From Lepidodermella squamata (lineage: Eukaryota; Animalia; Gastrotricha): a stretch of 64,000 bases of DNA. A program made the position numbers and the translations under genes. The notes below the pieces were generated by a model. The model worked only from the letters and a program-made list of their open reading frames with translations, was not told the origin of the DNA and searched no databases. Location of the stretch: the NCBI GenBank assembly GCA_047495785.1, contig JBLDXI010000001.1, forward strand, positions 3,596,001 through 3,660,000, given 5' to 3'. Numbering within the stretch: the stretch's first letter is position 1; the number at the start of each line of letters is the position of its first letter. Below are positions 21,082 to 39,114 of the stretch, one piece after another.

Positions 21082-22467
21082 ACATGCACATACTGCAATG
21101 TAAACCAAAAAAATTGCTCAAACTTGTTTATTCAGCTGATTTGATATCAGGACTATTCATTTATGATAGTGTGGAGAATAGAAGATAAATACGATTACGA
21201 AAGCTGAGGCTATATCTCCTAATGTTTACCCGATGCTAACTTACTAATAAAATTTGATTTCCTCAGCTACATACTTAATGGACCACCATTTATATCTAAG
21301 ACTAATTGCTAACTACTTTTGGTGTTTTATGCTTACAAACTTTGGTATCATTTATAATAGATGGCTGCAGTACAGCTGATTGTATGCATTACATAACTGC
21401 CGACTTCATTGTGACTTGATGTACATATCAAATTGTAATATGAATCTGCCTGTTTACAAGAGACTAGCGCCGCAAGATCAGTTTGTTCGAAAACTGAAAA
21501 AGCCCTGGTCGTGTTAGCTCAATTTATCAAACAGCCTCGAAATACCAGACTTCTGAATAGCATGTCTTAGAGGAAAGTTCTCTCCAATGGGCCTTACACT
21601 GCTTCTATATTGAGCTTTTTGGGCTAATGCAACTAGCTGTATCATTCAAGATCAAGCTCTGCCTGAAGAAATTAAGCTTCAGGTTAAAAAAACTTCTTAA
21701 CAATTGTCTGAACAATTGACGATTTCAATCCATCAGGCGAATAAGCGCAAACCAGCCGATCACAGCCTTATAATCAGGAAAAGCTTTAAACCTTTAAACA
21801 TGACGGGAGACAAGCCATCAAAAAGCTAAAACTTTCGAGCAAAAACATTATGCGCGTAGAACTAAGAGCTGACAAAGAAAGCCAACTCAAAAACTTTCCG
21901 CGGCAAATATTCCTTTTTCCGAGACAAACAAATTGTTTTTTGATATTAAGCAATTTATTTTGTTATCAAAAATAGTTATTTTCAAAAATTCACATTATTT
22001 TTTGTTTTCGCGCTCCATAAATCCCGTGACCGGCCCGTGATCCGTGATCGTGAAGACTTGCTGCTGGCCCGACGGGGACTCATCATTCATCAACTTGTCA
22101 ATGAGCCTTGAGCCTTGGATCGATTGCCATTGCCTGAACTCCTAGGTTGTTGTTGTTTGCTATACTTATTTCAATAGCGACCAGTGACCAGGGAAGGTTG
22201 ACGTCAAAACCTCAACGCGAGCAATTCCATGAGGAAGTCAAGATTCAACAGACACAAACATCAACTACTTATTGAGCATAATATGAGCGGCGCAAGCTGT
22301 AGCTGATGTCAGATTTTTATGAATCTAACAAGAGTAGTCTGAAAAACTCTTTTCTTTCTCCTTTCCCTTGCTCCAATACTCAATACTCTCGGGGATCAAT
22401 TATAGTTTACACATCTTTCTTGAAAGGTTAGTAGCATAAATATCGAGGTTATTGCGCAATAGTGGAT

Positions 22468-22772
22468 ACCCCCTTTCTTCAGAAGTGGTTGTTTCTTGTT
22501 CGGTTCTTTTTTCTTGCCATTATTGATTTCATGATCTGGATACTTGCATGTTACTTATACATTCTTGAGATATCAGGTAATAAGGTATTTTGCGACTTGC
22601 GACCTTATGCTAACTAGTTATTCCTGACTTCTGAATTTAATTCTCTCTGATTTATCCCCACTTCGTACCGCACTTCCTGCGGTAACTTGAAATTATCTTT
22701 TCACTGCTGGAGGACATTAAATGTTTCCTAAAAATGTTGCGCCGCATAAGCCAAATAAGGCTGGAGTCTTAA

Positions 22773-22777
<5 letters not shown>
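22468..22777 (+). repeat. 310-bp direct repeat, copy 1 (target-site duplication of the LINE)
   Basis: Identical by line-by-line reading to 26587-26896; abuts the LINE tail. Confidence 0.93.
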
Positions 22778-22807
<30 letters not shown>

Positions 22808-22955
22808 CGATTTATTGATTGGTCAATCAATTTTTAAAAACATAGAGGGAAACAAAGAAAACAGCAAAAAATTAATATCTTCAATAAATCGCCTTGGAAA
22901 CATTTCTTTTGAAGCAAACGTTATATCACTAAACTTTATAAAAACATATGGTAGA

Positions 22956-25900
22956 TTATCTGCAATACTTCTCGTAGGCAATATTGATTTTCTCCAAGGT
23001 AGCGGGCCCTGTGTACATGCTTGCTCGACCGAACAGTAGCCGGTCCAAATCTGCTTTCGCGCATTTCGTCTCATTTCTGGGGCACTCGCACATCAAGTGT
23101 TGAAGCAGCAGCCAATTCGAAGGCTCGATGCCTTGAGCACCACACCATTTGCAGATGACCTTCTCCTCCCTCCGCTGGTTCACATAAACACTTACGCCAA
23201 AAGTCGAGTCAGTTCTTATGCATAATAGCGTTCTGCCTAATTTCGGGCCCAAATCTTTCAAATACCGTTCGGCGTAAGAAGCCTCACGCGATACAGGGTT
23301 AATCGACCACAACCGTGAGCCTTTGTCCTCTTCGTTCTCCTTTCTTGCGATTGCCGTGTACATGTTTCTGACAACAGCCTTCGCGGCGGCCGCGTTAGTA
23401 CCAGGTTTCGTCAGGCCGTTCAGTCCGATGTTTCCTAACTCCAACTCCGCCCTATGTACCTTGTTGTACATTTTTCGTGACATTGACATCAGCTGTGTCA
23501 GGTATGCTGCTTGCAACAGACTATCGTCACTCGACGTCTTCATTCGAAAATAAAATCTAATCGCGCAGTTTTTTCTCTCCGTATTCGCGTCAGGCAACCA
23601 GAGCTCTCTCTCCAGCAACCTTTGGCTGGTACATGTAGGCAGTCGGTAAGCTCTCTTGATCACCCTACAATGCAAGGGCGGAATAGCTGATTGCCTATCC
23701 AGGCCCCATAACTCCGCGCCGTAAAGTCCAGCCGCCAGAACGACCCCCTTATACAGTAGTCTGAGACTTGCAATCGGCAACTCGTTAAATTTTTCAAATA
23801 AGCTTGGCAAGAGCCCGGTAAGCCTCAGCAGCTTCAGTCTACTTTGGCGGATAGCCTCTTTGAAGGAAAGATCCTCGGAGAACCAAACACCCAAGTATTT
23901 AAAAATACTGACCTTTTCCAGCTCGACGTCGCCAAAGAACAGCGGTTTCGGTTCAGCTTCTTGTTCGCCGAAAATGACGTACTTCGTTTTCCGTCTGTTG
24001 ACTGTCAACCAGTTGTCTTTTTCGTACTTAAGCAGTCGATACAAATAGCCCTCCATTTCGTGTCGATGGGCCGACAGTATGACCACATCGTCTGCGAACA
24101 GAATACACCTCACGCTCTTGATGCCGAGAGGCAAACCAGCTACGCCTGGCATTTCCAGCGCTTCTTCCAGGTCGTCAATATAGACGCAAAACAACAGCGG
24201 CGACAGAGGGTCGCCCTGCTTCACCCCATCGTGAACATCGAAGGTAGCCGAGATCTCATCGCCCACCGATACCGCCGCCTTTGTGTCATCATACATGTCA
24301 CGTAGCATGGCAACGAATTGAAGCGGCACGCCACGTCGTTCGAGCTTCTTGAACAAAAGGTTGCGGTTGATCTTGTCGAACGCCGAGGAAAAGTCGACAA
24401 AAGTTGCATATACACGTGGATGACGCTCGCGCCAGTAGGCCATAGCAGCGTGCAGGACCATTGCCGCGTCTAATGTTGAGCAGCCTTCCTGGAATCCAAA
24501 TTGGCACTTTTGCAATTTCGAAAACAGACTGAGCCATTCTCTCAACCGAACATCCAAAATTTTCGAGAAAACTTTTGCAATGCAGGGTTGCAGTGATATC
24601 GGTCGGTAGTTGTTCGGGTCATTCGAGTCTCCCTGTTTGAAGACCGGTACTATCAAGGCGGTTTTCCACGCTTTCGGGTACGGTTGCCCGTTCAAAATAC
24701 CAGTGTAGATCTTGCTCAGCATCGGAGCCATAACGTCAATGTTAGCTCGGATATGTTGATATCCAATACCATCAAGGCCAGACGCAGATACGCTAGCACA
24801 TCTCTCAATCGCAGCTTTCACTTCATCAACCGAAATCGGATCTAGAATCATTTCCCTTCGAATCACACGACCATCGGGTAATTTCACCGAACTCTCGCTG
24901 GGCTTCATCGCATTCATGAATGGGTTGGACCAAGCACTTAGAGCATCCAGTTTGATCAATTTGGTGGGGACACCGTCGTCGATAGCAATTCGCTTCACTG
25001 CAGTAACAGTCACTTTCTCACGGGTAGCAGTCGGTTTCTCTTCGGCATATGGTTTTCCACCTCCTAGTGCTTTCATCAGGTGACAACGAAAAACTTCTAC
25101 CGGCGGCATTTGCTGTCTTCCTTCCTTACGCTTCAGCTCCCAGACCTTGTTGGGCTTTTCGACTAAGCATTTCAACCTAGCTTCATCAGACAAACGCGCC
25201 AATTTACTCGAGCGAGGAGCGACATTAGCAGCCGTAGCTTTCGGTTTTCGCCATTTCCAGTTAAGTTTCCGCGACTTTTCTGCCACTGATACGAGCTTTT
25301 CTGACATCGTTGCAACAGACTCATTACCCGTTAACCTTTTTGCCAAATCCTGAACCTCCAGCTTGAATAGCTGATCATCAATGTGAATTCGATCAAGGAC
25401 CGGGCTCTCGAAAGTGATTGTCACCACCAGCGAGCTGTGATCAGAGATACTTGAACGCTCCACCGCCATTTCTTCAATCAGTTCGAAGCTGTCGAGATCT
25501 ACCAAGGCATAGTCAACAACCGAATTACTTGCCGGACGGGTGACAGAGCGGCTCTTTTCAGGTGTGACTCTTCCGTTCAAAACAATCAAATTATAGCAGT
25601 TAACAAACTCGACAAATTCAGCTACCGAGTGGCCATTTCTCACATTGTCATCACTTACTCTTTTGGGTAGCGTTTCACAAATTTCTTCGGGGGCGTCTTT
25701 CTCCTCACCGAGACGGCTGTTAAAGTCACCAAGGAGCAGCACGGAGTCGTGGTTGCCACTTAATTCTCGCATTTTATCGTTGAATTCCTCCCAGCAAGTG
25801 GAGTCTTCGTGGCGATACAGCCATCCACACAGAACTTTGCCTCTAACTGATGTGATCGATAATGCCAATGCATATGCTGTTTCCCATACGACCCGACATC

Positions 25901-26123
25901 TTTCTGCGAGATTCTTCTTTACGTATACCACATTGCCGCCAGATAGCCTACCCCGGCCCACGCGTTTTCCAGGAGATGCAAACTTTTCGTAACCTTCAAT
26001 ATCTGGTAACACATCTTCATACTTCCAGGTTTCCATGAAGCCACACATGCTGCTGTCCTTCACCATTTTAGTCATTACTCCCAACTTCTCAGTGCAGTAG
26101 CCTTGGATGTTGGCACACCGCAC
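22956..26123 (-). CDS. LINE ORF2: AP endonuclease, reverse transcriptase, C-terminal CCHC finger
   Basis: APE motifs (ANIQG, METW, LGDFNSR, VVDY, SDH); RT motifs (NYRPISL, QFGF, FVDFSSAFD, GVKQGDPLSP, LFADD, KYLG); CKWC...HLMCEC. Confidence 0.95.
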   Translation of the reverse strand: MRCANIQGYCTEKLGVMTKMVKDSSMCGFMETWKYEDVLPDIEGYEKFASPGKRVGRGRLSGGNVVYVKKNLAERCRVVWETAYALALSITSVRGKVLCGWLYRHEDSTCWEEFNDKMRELSGNHDSVLLLGDFNSRLGEEKDAPEEICETLPKRVSDDNVRNGHSVAEFVEFVNCYNLIVLNGRVTPEKSRSVTRPASNSVVDYALVDLDSFELIEEMAVERSSISDHSSLVVTITFESPVLDRIHIDDQLFKLEVQDLAKRLTGNESVATMSEKLVSVAEKSRKLNWKWRKPKATAANVAPRSSKLARLSDEARLKCLVEKPNKVWELKRKEGRQQMPPVEVFRCHLMKALGGGKPYAEEKPTATREKVTVTAVKRIAIDDGVPTKLIKLDALSAWSNPFMNAMKPSESSVKLPDGRVIRREMILDPISVDEVKAAIERCASVSASGLDGIGYQHIRANIDVMAPMLSKIYTGILNGQPYPKAWKTALIVPVFKQGDSNDPNNYRPISLQPCIAKVFSKILDVRLREWLSLFSKLQKCQFGFQEGCSTLDAAMVLHAAMAYWRERHPRVYATFVDFSSAFDKINRNLLFKKLERRGVPLQFVAMLRDMYDDTKAAVSVGDEISATFDVHDGVKQGDPLSPLLFCVYIDDLEEALEMPGVAGLPLGIKSVRCILFADDVVILSAHRHEMEGYLYRLLKYEKDNWLTVNRRKTKYVIFGEQEAEPKPLFFGDVELEKVSIFKYLGVWFSEDLSFKEAIRQSRLKLLRLTGLLPSLFEKFNELPIASLRLLYKGVVLAAGLYGAELWGLDRQSAIPPLHCRVIKRAYRLPTCTSQRLLERELWLPDANTERKNCAIRFYFRMKTSSDDSLLQAAYLTQLMSMSRKMYNKVHRAELELGNIGLNGLTKPGTNAAAAKAVVRNMYTAIARKENEEDKGSRLWSINPVSREASYAERYLKDLGPKLGRTLLCIRTDSTFGVSVYVNQRREEKVICKWCGAQGIEPSNWLLLQHLMCECPRNETKCAKADLDRLLFGRASMYTGPATLEKINIAYEKYCR

Positions 26124-26162
26124 TCGCCACCTTTCTTCTTCTTTGTTTTCCCTCTCCCCCCG

Positions 26163-26586
26163 TCATAGGCGACGTGGGCGGAAGTGACCATCAAAGACGG
26201 TCGCATCCTCGTCACTGTCGACAACCTTCTTCGTAGTCGGGTCATAACGCAGTCGCGCAATGCCTTGGTCGTTGACCACTCGCAACCTCATGCTGCGGAC
26301 CTGGAAATAGCTGGTGCCCTCCACTTTATTTGGGTTTCTTCGCTTGCCCTCTTGAACGAGAGCTTTCTCAGCCTCCATAAGGTTCGCCGGCACAAAGCGG
26401 CGCATCCTAACGCCGTTCGGCAGTTCTTTCGTCATGTCCTCCAAATTTTCATTGGTGATCGCGCTGTTGACAGGGACCACCAGTATCGGGCGGTTGCTGT
26501 TGTCTTTCTTGAGACCCAGCCGACGGGCACGAAAGAAGACACCCTGCAGTCGCGGCACCGCTGTTTTCACAGCGTTGATCAGAGTG
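26163..26586 (-). CDS. LINE ORF1, C-terminal portion (5'-truncated)
   Basis: Open up to the 5' junction at 26586; RARRLG...NRPILV resembles the ORF1 RRM/CTD region of CR1/L2/RTEX-group LINEs. Confidence 0.75.
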
Positions 26587-26896
26587 ACCCCCTTTCTTCA
26601 GAAGTGGTTGTTTCTTGTTCGGTTCTTTTTTCTTGCCATTATTGATTTCATGATCTGGATACTTGCATGTTACTTATACATTCTTGAGATATCAGGTAAT
26701 AAGGTATTTTGCGACTTGCGACCTTATGCTAACTAGTTATTCCTGACTTCTGAATTTAATTCTCTCTGATTTATCCCCACTTCGTACCGCACTTCCTGCG
26801 GTAACTTGAAATTATCTTTTCACTGCTGGAGGACATTAAATGTTTCCTAAAAATGTTGCGCCGCATAAGCCAAATAAGGCTGGAGTCTTAATTTTG
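26587..26896 (+). repeat. 310-bp direct repeat, copy 2 (target-site duplication of the LINE)
   Basis: Identical to 22468-22777; starts exactly where ORF1 is truncated. Confidence 0.93.
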
Positions 26897-26998
26897 CATT
26901 TATTTACCAACATAATGTCTGTTTAGGTTGTTATTGTTGTTGTTGATCCCTTGGACAGTTTATATTGTTACTTTGTCGTTGAGTTTTGTTTCACCTGG

Positions 26999-28807
26999 AT
27001 GACAACATTAAAGCCGGGCGATTACCGGATATTGACTTCCAAGCAAATTGAATCCGATATGGATACCTTATCAAAGCTGGACTCAAAAAAGGCAAGCAAG
27101 GATGCTAAGAAAGATAAATCCAAAACATCACACTCGCCGAAAGGTGTGATGGGCAAATGGGTCTCTAAAGAAAAAACTCGGCCGATCATCTCGCCACCGA
27201 GTAACTTCGAACACACAGTTCACGTCGATTTCGACCCTGTCGTTGGTGAATTTGTCGGCATGCCCGAAGAATGGTTTAGAATTCTGAAAGGCTCGAACAT
27301 TAGCGAGGCGGAGCGAAAGCAAAATCCTCAGGCTGTTGTTGACGCGTTGAAATATTACACAGATAAAGGTCGAGGCGCTTATGGATCAGCTGAGCAGAAG
27401 TATATGACGAATGTGCAACACTCGTTTGCTTCGCTAGACGGCGGTTCCAACAAACTGTCGAATCCTTCGTTAGACGAAGAATTATCAGCTGGAACAAACA
27501 ACGGCGACTCCGATGGAGAAACTCGCGATGCCCCGCCTCGAATCCCCGAAAGGCCGGCCAAGACCTTGTCAATCTACACCCGGCCTGTTGATAACGAATA
27601 CGTCGTTGGTCATTCAGCTCAAGATGTTAACCCCTTAGCCGCTGTTGGTCGGGCTAATGGCAGTAAAAAGCGCATGACCGACGAAGAAGTCATGGAAAGA
27701 CTTCGAGCTATCGTTTCATTCGGCGACCCGAATCGGAAGTACATAAAACTCGAAAAAATCGGCCAGGGCGCGTCGGGTTCCGTCTTCATCGGCCGCGAAA
27801 TCTCAACAGGGCGAGAAGTCGCGATTAAACAAATGAAAATAGGTCAGCAACCGAAGAAGGAGCTTATCCTCAATGAAATTTTGGTCATGCGTGAAAATAA
27901 GAACGCAAATATTGTCAACTATCTCGACTCGTATCTTGTGAATGACGAATTATGGGTCGTTATGGAGTACCTGGCCGGCGGTTCGTTGACCGATGTCGTC
28001 ACGGAAACAATAATGGACGAGTGTCAAATTGCAGCCGTGTGCCGTGAATGCCTGCAAGCCCTCGAGTTTTTACACGAAAATCAGGTGATTCATCGAGACA
28101 TCAAGTCAGATAATATTTTGCTTGGCCTTGATGGCTCCGTGAAGCTGACCGATTTCGGCTTCTGCGCTCAACTATCGGCCGAACAGGCGAAACGGTCGAC
28201 TCTAGTCGGAACTCCGTATTGGATGGCGCCAGAAGTTGTGAGGCGGCAAGCGTACGGACCGAAAGTTGATATCTGGTCATTAGGTAATTACTTGAAAATT
28301 ATTCCGGTCAACCTGAAACGAAAAGAAAATTGGAGTATCCTAGAGGTCTCAAAATTAGAAATTCAAAAATCCTCGAGAATTACCCCCATTTTTCTTTCAA
28401 TTTTCATTTGGGCAAAATTCTCGCTCTCGGCAAAATTCTTCAATCTGACCTATTTATTGGCTAATTTATTCATTTTTTTGCACTTAGGTGTGATGTGCAT
28501 TGAATGTGTTGACGGCGAACCGCCATATCTGAACGAAGACCCATTGCGAGCGCTGTACTTGATAATGACCAACGGCAAGCCTGAATTCCGCAGCCGGGCC
28601 CAGTTGTCGGCCGAATTTTCCGATTTCCTCGACCGTTGCCTCGAGGTGGACGTGTCGCGGCGCGCCTCGGCCACCGAGCTCATGCGCCACCCGTTCGTCA
28701 AAAAAGCGAAGCCGCTCGCCTCACTGCGCCCGCTCATCCTCGCGGCGAAGAAAGTGCGCCAGGGCTCGGCGGGCCCGCAGCAGAACACGGCCGGGCCTAT
28801 TCGTTGA
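26999..28807 (+). CDS. PAK: Group I p21-activated kinase (PAK1/2/3-like)
   Basis: [20 protein letters not shown], autoinhibitory EFVGMPEEW...QNPQAV, PIX-binding PPRIPERP, kinase [31 protein letters not shown]; intron 28284-28487. Confidence 0.96.
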
Positions 28808-30426: not shown

Positions 30427-30498
30427 AGCAGAGTGGCGCAGTGGAAGCGCGCTGGGCCCATAACCCAGAGGTCTGTAGATCGAAACTACGCTCTGCTA
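30427..30498 (+). tRNA. tRNA-iMet: Initiator tRNA-Met (CAT)
   Basis: AGCAGAG acceptor (A1:U72), CAT anticodon in a GGG/CCC stem, initiator T-loop ATCGAAA, downstream T run. Confidence 0.97.
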
Positions 30499-39042: not shown

Positions 39043-39114
39043 AGCAGAGTGGCGCAGTGGAAGCGCGCTGGGCCCATAACCCAGAGGTCTGTAGATCGAA
39101 ACTACGCTCTGCTA
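39043..39114 (+). tRNA. tRNA-iMet: Initiator tRNA-Met (CAT)
   Basis: Identical to 30427-30498; T-run terminator. Confidence 0.97.

What the first reader, a model, noticed from the sequence alone, without database searches (positions are those of the whole stretch)
22468..26896. LINE with an apparently perfect 310-bp target-site duplication
Seen: identical 310-bp repeats abut the (ATC)n tail and the 5' truncation point. Known: LINE TSDs are usually 7-20 bp; unusually long ones are reported for some RTE-clade elements. Inference: second-strand nick ~310 bp from the first, very recent insertion, and a family that duplicates host DNA as it moves.
Basis: partly seen in the sequence, partly recalled or inferred. 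Interest (0 to 1): 0.8.

Follow-up and report, generated by a model that had tools for sequence, protein, structure and literature searches.

The report
Young LINE with 310-bp target duplication
A recently inserted jumping gene (LINE) really is flanked by two identical 310-bp copies of its target; long duplications like this are known but rare elsewhere, and they turn out to be common for several LINE families in this animal's genome.

Summary
Window 22468-22777 and 26587-26896 are identical over 310 bp. One copy abuts the (ATC)n tail and the other abuts the 5' truncation point of a minus-strand LINE at 22778-26586, which encodes an endonuclease and a reverse transcriptase.

The 310 bp is host DNA, not part of the element. 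It occurs only twice in the 121-Mb genome. A 99.9% identical full-length sister copy on contig C21 has entirely different flanks.

The sister copy has its own long flanking duplication of 341 bp. Its 3'-side copy also holds 1,153 bp of unique host DNA, so the target interval there was 1,494 bp.

I mapped six further LINE insertions in this genome:
- Three have long duplications: about 243 bp, 336 bp, and at least 622 bp (probably about 2.2 kb).
- One has an ordinary 17-bp duplication.
- Two show none that I could detect.

The best reading is genuine target-primed reverse transcription completed at a second-strand break hundreds of bases from the first nick. This is a loose, variable coupling shared by several LINE families here.

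Long target-site duplications (TSDs) are already documented for human L1, Dualen in Chlamydomonas and R9 in rotifers. This is therefore a new member of a known kind. The scan had already noted similar cases elsewhere in this genome. The assembly check rests on short-read contigs only, and no empty allele was seen.

The parts
22468..22777 (.). Target-site duplication, copy A. It lies on the 3' side in element sense and abuts the microsatellite tail.
   Evidence: Identical to 26587-26896 over 310 bp. Only two copies exist in the whole genome.
22778..22807 (-). (ATC)n microsatellite tail of the LINE.
   Evidence: Read directly from the sequence. The sister copy carries (GAATC)n after the same 3' end...AATAAATCGAATC.
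22808..22955 (-). 3' UTR with an AATAAA signal.
   Evidence: Aligned to the sister copy with one 1-nt indel.
22956..26123 (-). ORF2, 1,055 aa from the first listed start codon. It holds an apurinic-type endonuclease (aa 28-231) and a reverse transcriptase (aa 503-747).
   Evidence: ORF list. Pfam RVT_1 E=3e-31; Exo_endo_phos E=1e-4, which is below the family cut-off. The nearest database protein is 40% identical.
26163..26586 (-). 3' part of ORF1, cut at the 5' truncation point. It ends in a single UGA that is in frame with ORF2.
   Evidence: ORF list. The alignment to full-length ORF1 of the sister copy starts at element position 514 of 4,311.
26587..26896 (.). Target-site duplication, copy B. 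It lies on the 5' side in element sense and abuts the truncated 5' end.
   Evidence: Contigs of run X1 carry the k-mers joining the LINE to the first 30 bases of this copy (record 7: 26361-26616).
26999..28807 (+). Host PAK-type kinase gene (context only). Its ATG is 102 bp from copy B, so the duplicated 310 bp is its proximal upstream region.
   Evidence: Pfam PBD E=5e-23 and Pkinase; ORF list.

Best explanation
[quoted passage not shown] The first nick was on the window's + strand between 26896 and 26897 (TTTTG|CATTT). Its 3' end primed cDNA synthesis on the RNA's ATC-ending tail, with stuttering that built the (ATC)n run. Reverse transcription stopped 513 nt short of the RNA's 5' end. The cDNA was then joined to the other strand at a break about 310 bp away (between 26586 and 26587) rather than the usual 7-20 bp. 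Fill-in of the two single-stranded 310-nt stretches produced the two identical copies. Shown here: the anatomy, the uniqueness of the 310 bp, the youth of the insertion, and the recurrence of long duplications in the sister copy and in other LINE families of this genome. Inferred: how the distant second break arises. Duplication lengths vary widely between insertions here (17, about 243, 310, 336, 341 from a 1,494-bp interval, and about 2,000 bp). I therefore think second-strand cleavage is not tightly coupled to the first nick in these elements. Integration would instead be completed at whatever distant nick, gap or replication intermediate is available.
For: The 310-bp repeat is perfect and its edges coincide exactly with the tail and the truncated 5' end. 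The 310 bp is found only at these two places in 121 Mb. Element structure: ORF1 fragment plus ORF2 with endonuclease and reverse transcriptase. A full-length sister copy lies at G000:C21:684191-688501. It is 99.9% identical, has other flanks and has a different tail repeat. That sister copy is flanked by a 341-bp duplication at 100% identity. Searching upstream flanks against the genome found further insertions from other LINE families with perfect flanking duplications. They are about 243 bp on C7, 336 bp on C20, and at least 622 bp on C24 with 6,641-bp spacing, which implies about 2-2.2 kb. A C19 element has a normal 17-bp duplication, which shows the canonical outcome also occurs. All five mapped duplications start with C, matching the C-ending tails. 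Contigs of run X1 differ from the assembly at 4 sites in the left flank, yet they enter the 310-bp repeat from both the left flank and the LINE 5' end. Published precedent for long duplications made by TPRT: PMC5223499, PMC9977147 and bioRxiv 10.1101/2024.12.14.628481.
Against: No long read or read pair spanning a whole duplicated copy was available. No empty allele was seen. The C21 duplication is not a simple staggered-cut product, because its 5'-side copy lacks 1,153 bp that the 3'-side copy has, with a blunt junction. The survey is small (8 insertions), and two cases without a long duplication are weak negatives: one looks like a fragment and the other lies in repetitive flank. Insertions next to or inside genes may survive only when a long duplication rebuilds the gene, so the high share of long duplications may partly reflect selection rather than mechanism.
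Confidence: 0.85

Rival explanations
1. The insertion is real, but the duplication was made by replication-type repair rather than by a simple staggered pair of nicks. Candidates are break-induced or template-switching synthesis from the reciprocal end, or joining across sister chromatids at a replication fork.
For: On C21 the 5'-side copy joins two host segments (197 + 144 bp) that lie 1,153 bp apart in the 3'-side copy. The junction is blunt, as expected from a template jump. Duplication lengths reach about 2 kb. A break-induced replication origin has been proposed for 1-10 kb L1-linked tandem duplications (bioRxiv 10.1101/2024.12.14.628481).
Against: The window copy and the C7 and C20 cases are clean, uninterrupted and perfect, as simple fill-in predicts. 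The 1,153-bp gap could equally be a later deletion. Sequence alone cannot separate the two models.
Confidence: 0.3
2. The long duplications look common only because of survivorship. Most insertions make short duplications, but in this gene-dense genome those landing in or beside genes persist mainly when a long duplication regenerates an intact promoter or gene.
For: The window duplication is the 310 bp just upstream of a PAK gene. The C24 element interrupts an Adaptin_N (gamma-COP-like) reading frame, and the front of that gene is repeated downstream. On C21 the second break lies in an open frame and the intact interval is kept downstream.
Against: This explains retention, not how duplications of 0.2-2 kb arise at all. 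All the copies are very young (100% identical duplicated copies), which leaves little time for selection. It does not bear on whether the 310-bp duplication at this locus is real.
Confidence: 0.25
3. Assembly artefact: the true locus has one 310-bp copy, and the assembler duplicated it around a heterozygous insertion.
For: There was no long-read check, and the tail junction is not covered by the read tool.
Against: The same architecture recurs at four other loci on other contigs, each with a different unique flank. X1 contigs give two different left-hand contexts for the start of the 310 bp, namely the left flank and the LINE 5' end. With a single copy, the LINE 5' end could not be joined to the far end of the interval while the tail is joined to its near end.
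Confidence: 0.03
4. The 310 bp is a terminal repeat of the element itself, as in LTR or Penelope-like elements. Alternatively, the duplication arose after insertion by unequal recombination.
For: Direct repeats flanking a reverse-transcriptase gene superficially resemble LTRs.
Against: The 310 bp is absent from every other copy and from the rest of the genome. The sister copy ends in the same tail motif but has unrelated flanks. The microsatellite tail lies inside the repeats and the 5' end is a truncation inside ORF1. The repeat edges coincide to the base with the element ends, which a later duplication would not reproduce.
Confidence: 0.02

Closest known systems
Human LINE-1 insertions with large target-site duplications
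   Same: These are TPRT insertions by a LINE with an apurinic-type endonuclease. They have an intact 3' tail, frequent 5' truncation and flanking duplications of more than 100 bp up to kilobases. Lengths vary from event to event. Sources: PMC5223499 and bioRxiv 10.1101/2024.12.14.628481.
   Different: In L1 such events were under 10% of those recovered in HeLa cells and became the majority only in cells lacking nucleotide excision repair. Most data are somatic or from cell culture. Here 5 of 8 mapped insertions in a genome assembly of an invertebrate exceed 200 bp. The elements end in microsatellites rather than poly(A), and full-length copies begin with a spliced leader.
Dualen-4b_cRei of Chlamydomonas reinhardtii
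   Same: This is a LINE for which more than half of new insertions carry flanking duplications over 50 bp (median 900 bp) of variable length (PMC9977147). It is the closest match in frequency and size range.
   Different: Dualen carries two endonucleases (restriction-like and apurinic-type), and the authors suggest that pairing as the cause. It is from a green alga. The element here shows only the apurinic-type domain in Pfam and comes from an animal. Several unrelated LINE families here share the behaviour.
R9 elements of bdelloid rotifers (126-bp duplication; Gladyshev and Arkhipova 2009, cited in PMC9977147 and PMC2861651)
   Same: An animal LINE with a target duplication far above 20 bp.
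   Different: From the title and citations only, since I could not read the paper: R9 is specific to rDNA and makes one fixed length of 126 bp. Here the targets are unrelated unique sites and the lengths range from 17 bp to about 2 kb.
RTE-clade LINEs
   Same: Microsatellite-like 3' tails, and a link between the first base of the duplication and the tail repeat (PMC6007223). Here all five mapped duplications start with C after C-ending tails.
   Different: RTE duplications are reported as mostly 7-15 bp (Ichiyanagi and Okada 2008, as cited in PMC6007223) and 10-12 bp for the schistosome element SR3 (PMC1291365). RTEs are about 3.2 kb, essentially with one ORF. This element is 4.3 kb with a 282-aa ORF1.

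Membership tests
Non-LTR retrotransposon (LINE) inserted by target-primed reverse transcription | Encodes a reverse transcriptase and an apurinic-type endonuclease in one ORF2. | tested here: met
   Pfam RVT_1 E=3e-31. Exo_endo_phos E=1e-4 and Exo_endo_phos_2 E=1e-3 are below their cut-offs but sit in the expected N-terminal position. All database relatives carry the same pair of domains.
Non-LTR retrotransposon (LINE) inserted by target-primed reverse transcription | An intact 3' end with a tail repeat, a variable 5' truncation, and no terminal repeats of its own. | tested here: met
   The window copy lacks the first 513 nt of the 4,311-nt sister copy. Both end in ...AATAAATCGAATC followed by a microsatellite.
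Non-LTR retrotransposon (LINE) inserted by target-primed reverse transcription | Flanked by a duplication of unique target DNA whose edges meet the element ends. | tested here: met
   The 310-bp repeat is perfect, occurs only twice in the genome, and has edges at the tail and the 5' end.
RTE clade | A short element of about 3.2 kb, essentially with a single ORF, making 7-15 bp duplications. | tested here: not met
   The element is 4,311 nt with a 282-aa ORF1 and a 1,068-aa ORF2. The duplications are 310 and 341 bp. No phylogeny against named reference elements could be run, so the clade remains unassigned.
LTR or Penelope-like element with its own terminal repeats | The flanking repeat is part of the element and travels with every copy. 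| tested here: not met
   The 310 bp is absent from the sister copy and from the rest of the genome.
Dualen clade | A restriction-like endonuclease in addition to the apurinic-type endonuclease. | tested here: inconclusive
   Pfam finds no second nuclease domain in ORF2. However, the roughly 300 residues after the reverse transcriptase have no hit at all, and no structure was predicted.
R9-type fixed long duplication | One constant duplication length at one specific target site. | tested here: not met
   The two copies of this family give 310 bp and 341 bp (from a 1,494-bp interval) at unrelated targets. The sampled LINE families together range from 17 bp to about 2 kb.

The most novel reading that the evidence does not exclude
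In this animal, LINEs of at least four families routinely complete integration at a second-strand break 0.2-2 kb from the first nick. About half or more of young insertions, in the sample tested here, would therefore create a tandem duplication of promoter or exon DNA. That would make it a natural germline system in which first- and second-strand cleavage are uncoupled, whether because of the elements or because of a peculiarity of host repair. It would also make these LINEs a steady source of small gene-fragment duplications.
Probability: 0.4. Interest if true: 0.7.

Novelty: new member of a known kind. Interest (0 to 1): 0.5.

Why it matters
How LINEs cut and prime the second DNA strand is still the least understood step of their insertion. 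Long target duplications are the visible trace of that step going differently. So far they are known mainly from cell-culture L1 events, repair-deficient cells, tumours and one algal LINE. This genome offers several young LINE families that leave clean duplications of 0.2-2 kb in inherited DNA, alongside ordinary 17-bp ones. It therefore gives natural material for asking whether the element or the host sets the distance. The duplications also copy promoters and gene fronts, here the upstream region of a PAK kinase gene. That may explain how insertions next to essential genes are tolerated, and it supplies raw material for new gene fragments.

Tried and rejected
- **Older family copies.** I looked for duplications around older fragments on C21 (2.58 Mb), C9, C11 and C1 (4.83 Mb). 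They are fragmentary or rearranged, and no flanking repeats could be assigned.
- **More genome sequence.** I replaced this with searches of upstream flanks against the genome, which give coordinates only. The 3' junctions on C7, C20 and C24 were therefore not read base by base.
- **Clade assignment.** The word search found relatives without names, the best at 40% identity. The Atlas look-up gave only generic endonuclease/reverse-transcriptase clusters. ORF1 has no Pfam family. No named reference LINEs were available for a tree.
- **Reads.** Only Logan contigs were offered. The tail junction is masked, run X3 holds nothing, and X2 shows many opposite-strand joints that look like library artefacts. 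An empty allele cannot be recognised in short contigs because both of its junctions also exist in the filled allele.
- **The 1,153-bp gap on C21.** I considered whether it is an intron removed from an RNA-derived copy. I rejected this because its edges (AT...AA) are not splice sites on either strand, and the junction has no microhomology.
- **RNA families.** Rfam finds no RNA family in 22000-27400.
Full report
**The observation**

Window 22468-22777 and 26587-26896 are identical over exactly 310 bp, and the match stops on both sides. Copy A is followed at once by (GAT)n at 22778-22807. Copy B is preceded at once by coding sequence on the minus strand.

Between the two copies lies a minus-strand element:
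- an (ATC)n tail;
- a 3' UTR with AATAAA;
- an ORF2 of 1,055 aa (22956-26123) with an N-terminal apurinic-type endonuclease and a reverse transcriptase (Pfam RVT_1 E=3e-31; endonuclease matches weak but in the right place);
- the 3' part of an ORF1 that runs open to 26586.

Apart from two tRNA-Met genes, this is the only long direct repeat in the 64-kb window.

**The 310 bp is host DNA, not part of the element**

A search of the whole 121-Mb assembly finds the 310 bp only at these two places.

The element has one near-identical relative, at G000:C21:684191-688501. It is 4,311 nt long and full length, with a 282-aa ORF1 and a 1,068-aa ORF2 in one frame separated by a single stop codon.

Over the shared 3.79 kb the two copies differ by three substitutions and one 1-nt indel. 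The window copy starts at position 514 of the full element, so its 5' end is a true truncation inside ORF1. Five of the seven bases beyond the junction match the source, which is weak microhomology.

The sister copy's flanks are unrelated to the 310 bp. Its tail is (GAATC)n rather than (ATC)n after the same terminal ...AATAAATCGAATC. This shows the tail is built by reiterated copying at the start of reverse transcription. Together these results exclude an LTR or Penelope-like reading.

**The sister copy also has a long flanking duplication**

The 341 bp directly upstream of its 5' end (L029:850-1190) recur at 100% identity downstream of its tail, in two pieces. The first 197 bp start right after the tail (L029:5502-5698). 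The remaining 144 bp lie at L029:6852-6995. Between them are 1,153 bp that are single-copy in the genome and contain open frames.

The simplest description is a 1,494-bp target interval whose 5'-side copy lacks an internal 1,153 bp. The junction is blunt, and the edges of the missing piece are not splice sites.

**How general this is in the genome**

Full-length copies begin with a motif of about 33 nt that occurs about 500 times in the genome. Most occurrences lie in 8.46-kb rDNA units, where the motif sits beside the 5S gene and is followed by GAG|GTTAGT. That is a spliced-leader RNA gene. LINEs of several families therefore begin with the spliced leader, and I used this as an unbiased handle on full-length insertions.

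For most of these insertions I therefore searched the roughly 600 bp upstream of the 5' end against the genome, looking for a second copy just beyond the element's 3' end. The C19 element was read directly from both of its junctions.

| Insertion | Flanking duplication | Basis |
|---|---|---|
| C7:4039k | second copy at 4033758-4034000, 243 bp, 100% identical | |
| C20:1457k | second copy at 1451507-1451841, 336 bp, 100% identical | |
| C24:4065.5k | all 622 bp tested recur 6,641 bp downstream, 100% identical; with an element of about 4.4-4.6 kb this implies about 2-2.2 kb | |
| C19:2444.6k | ordinary 17 bp (CGTTGCCAATAAATCAT), read from both junctions | |
| C1:2749.9k | none detected; the copy looks like a fragment | |
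| C23:1030.8k | none detected nearby; the flank is repetitive | |

On C24 the interrupted flank encodes an Adaptin_N, gamma-COP-like protein.

Counting the window and C21 copies, five of eight insertions have duplications over 200 bp. These five belong to four families that share only 40-54% ORF2 identity or less. All five mapped duplications start with C, matching the C-ending tails. Lengths are not fixed: the two copies of the window's family give 310 and 341 bp, and the sampled families together range from 17 bp to about 2 kb.

Unchecked notes from this scan list further cases in the same genome: 86, 246, 338, 440, 588, 990 and 2,209 bp. Some of these are probably the loci I mapped.

**Assembly check**

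Only contigs of public short-read runs were available. In run X1 one contig runs from the left flank 30 bases into the repeat. Another runs from the LINE 5' end 30 bases into the repeat. A third starts at the first base of the repeat and continues into the right flank.

This is what a de Bruijn graph gives when the same 310 bp has two different left-hand neighbours. The tail junction was masked as a repeat.

X1 differs from the assembly at four sites in 446 bp of left flank, so it is not simply the same haplotype. No empty allele could be recognised. Recurrence of the same architecture at four other loci argues strongly against an artefact.

**Mechanism**

Shown here: a young insertion with the hallmarks of target-primed reverse transcription and a unique-sequence duplication of 309-310 bp.

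Inferred:
- The first nick fell at TTTTG|CATTT on the window's + strand.
- cDNA synthesis was primed on the ATC-ending RNA.
- Synthesis ended early, at position 514 of the element.
- The cDNA was joined at a second-strand break about 310 bp away.
- Fill-in of both single-stranded stretches followed.

The length varies from 17 bp to about 2 kb across insertions, and it varies between the two copies of one family. I therefore favour loose coupling of the second break, meaning use of a distant nick, gap or replication intermediate, over a fixed enzyme geometry.

The split duplication on C21 suggests that template switching or break-induced synthesis can be involved. I rate this mechanistic variant at about 0.3.

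Part of the high frequency may be survivorship. In the window, on C21 and on C24 the duplication leaves an intact gene front or promoter next to the gene. For the window this is the 310 bp ending 102 bp before the ATG of the PAK gene.

**Comparison with what is known**

| System | Reported target duplication | Source |
|---|---|---|
| Human L1, usual | 5-30 bp | PMC5223499, |
| Human L1, HeLa cells | over 100 bp in under 10% of events | PMC5223499, |
| Human L1, cells lacking nucleotide excision repair | over 100 bp in 57-91% of events | PMC5223499, |
| L1-linked tandem duplications | 1-10 kb, regarded as large target duplications | bioRxiv 10.1101/2024.12.14.628481, |
| Dualen-4b, Chlamydomonas | over 50 bp in more than half of new insertions, median 900 bp; authors contrast this with the 126 bp of rotifer R9 | PMC9977147, |
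| RTE clade | mostly 7-15 bp | PMC6007223, PMC1291365, |

The locus is thus a clean new example of a documented outcome. What stands out is how often it occurs here, across several LINE families, in inherited DNA of an animal.

**Verdict**

Novelty is new member of a known kind, with interest 0.5. The more novel reading is that this genome's LINEs routinely uncouple the two strand breaks. It has a probability of about 0.4 and needs a genome-wide census and de novo insertions to test.

Noticed in passing
L029:1191-1240 (G000:C21:684191-); L057:300-340; also L048-L055: Full-length LINE copies of several families begin with the roughly 33-nt spliced-leader exon. Its gene (GAG|GTTAGT donor) sits beside the 5S gene in the 8.46-kb rDNA unit. 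Trans-spliced LINE mRNAs were therefore retrotransposed. The motif occurs about 500 times in the genome, mostly in rDNA arrays.
   Followed up: partly
window 26124-26165, minus strand: ORF1 and ORF2 of the LINE are in the same frame, separated by a single UGA. This is a candidate for stop-codon readthrough or reinitiation.
   Followed up: no
window 22778-22807; L029:5475-5505; C19 locus (L039): Two 99.9% identical sister copies carry different tail repeats, (ATC)n and (GAATC)n, after the same terminal GAATC. A related family carries (ATCGT)n. The tail seems to be generated anew at each insertion.
   Followed up: partly
L029:850-1190 compared with L029:5502-6995: The sister copy's 5'-side duplication lacks 1,153 bp of unique host DNA that the 3'-side copy has. 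The junction is blunt and is not an intron.
   Followed up: partly
L042:84-926 (G000:C24:4064649-4065491): A LINE of another family interrupts an Adaptin_N (gamma-COP-like) reading frame. At least 622 bp of the upstream gene recur 6,641 bp downstream, which implies a duplication of about 2 kb that probably rebuilds the gene.
   Followed up: partly
window 30427-30498 and 39043-39114: Two identical tRNA-Met (CAT) genes lie 8.6 kb apart, within 77-nt identical repeats.
   Followed up: partly
window 26999-28807: A PAK-type kinase gene (PBD plus protein kinase domains) that is almost intron-free. The LINE sits antisense in its proximal upstream region.
   Followed up: partly
G000:C17:3882499-3987146 and other rDNA arrays (coordinates): The spacing of spliced-leader motifs in the rDNA arrays is mostly 8,459 bp, but some units measure 10-18 kb. 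This suggests insertions inside rDNA units.
   Followed up: no
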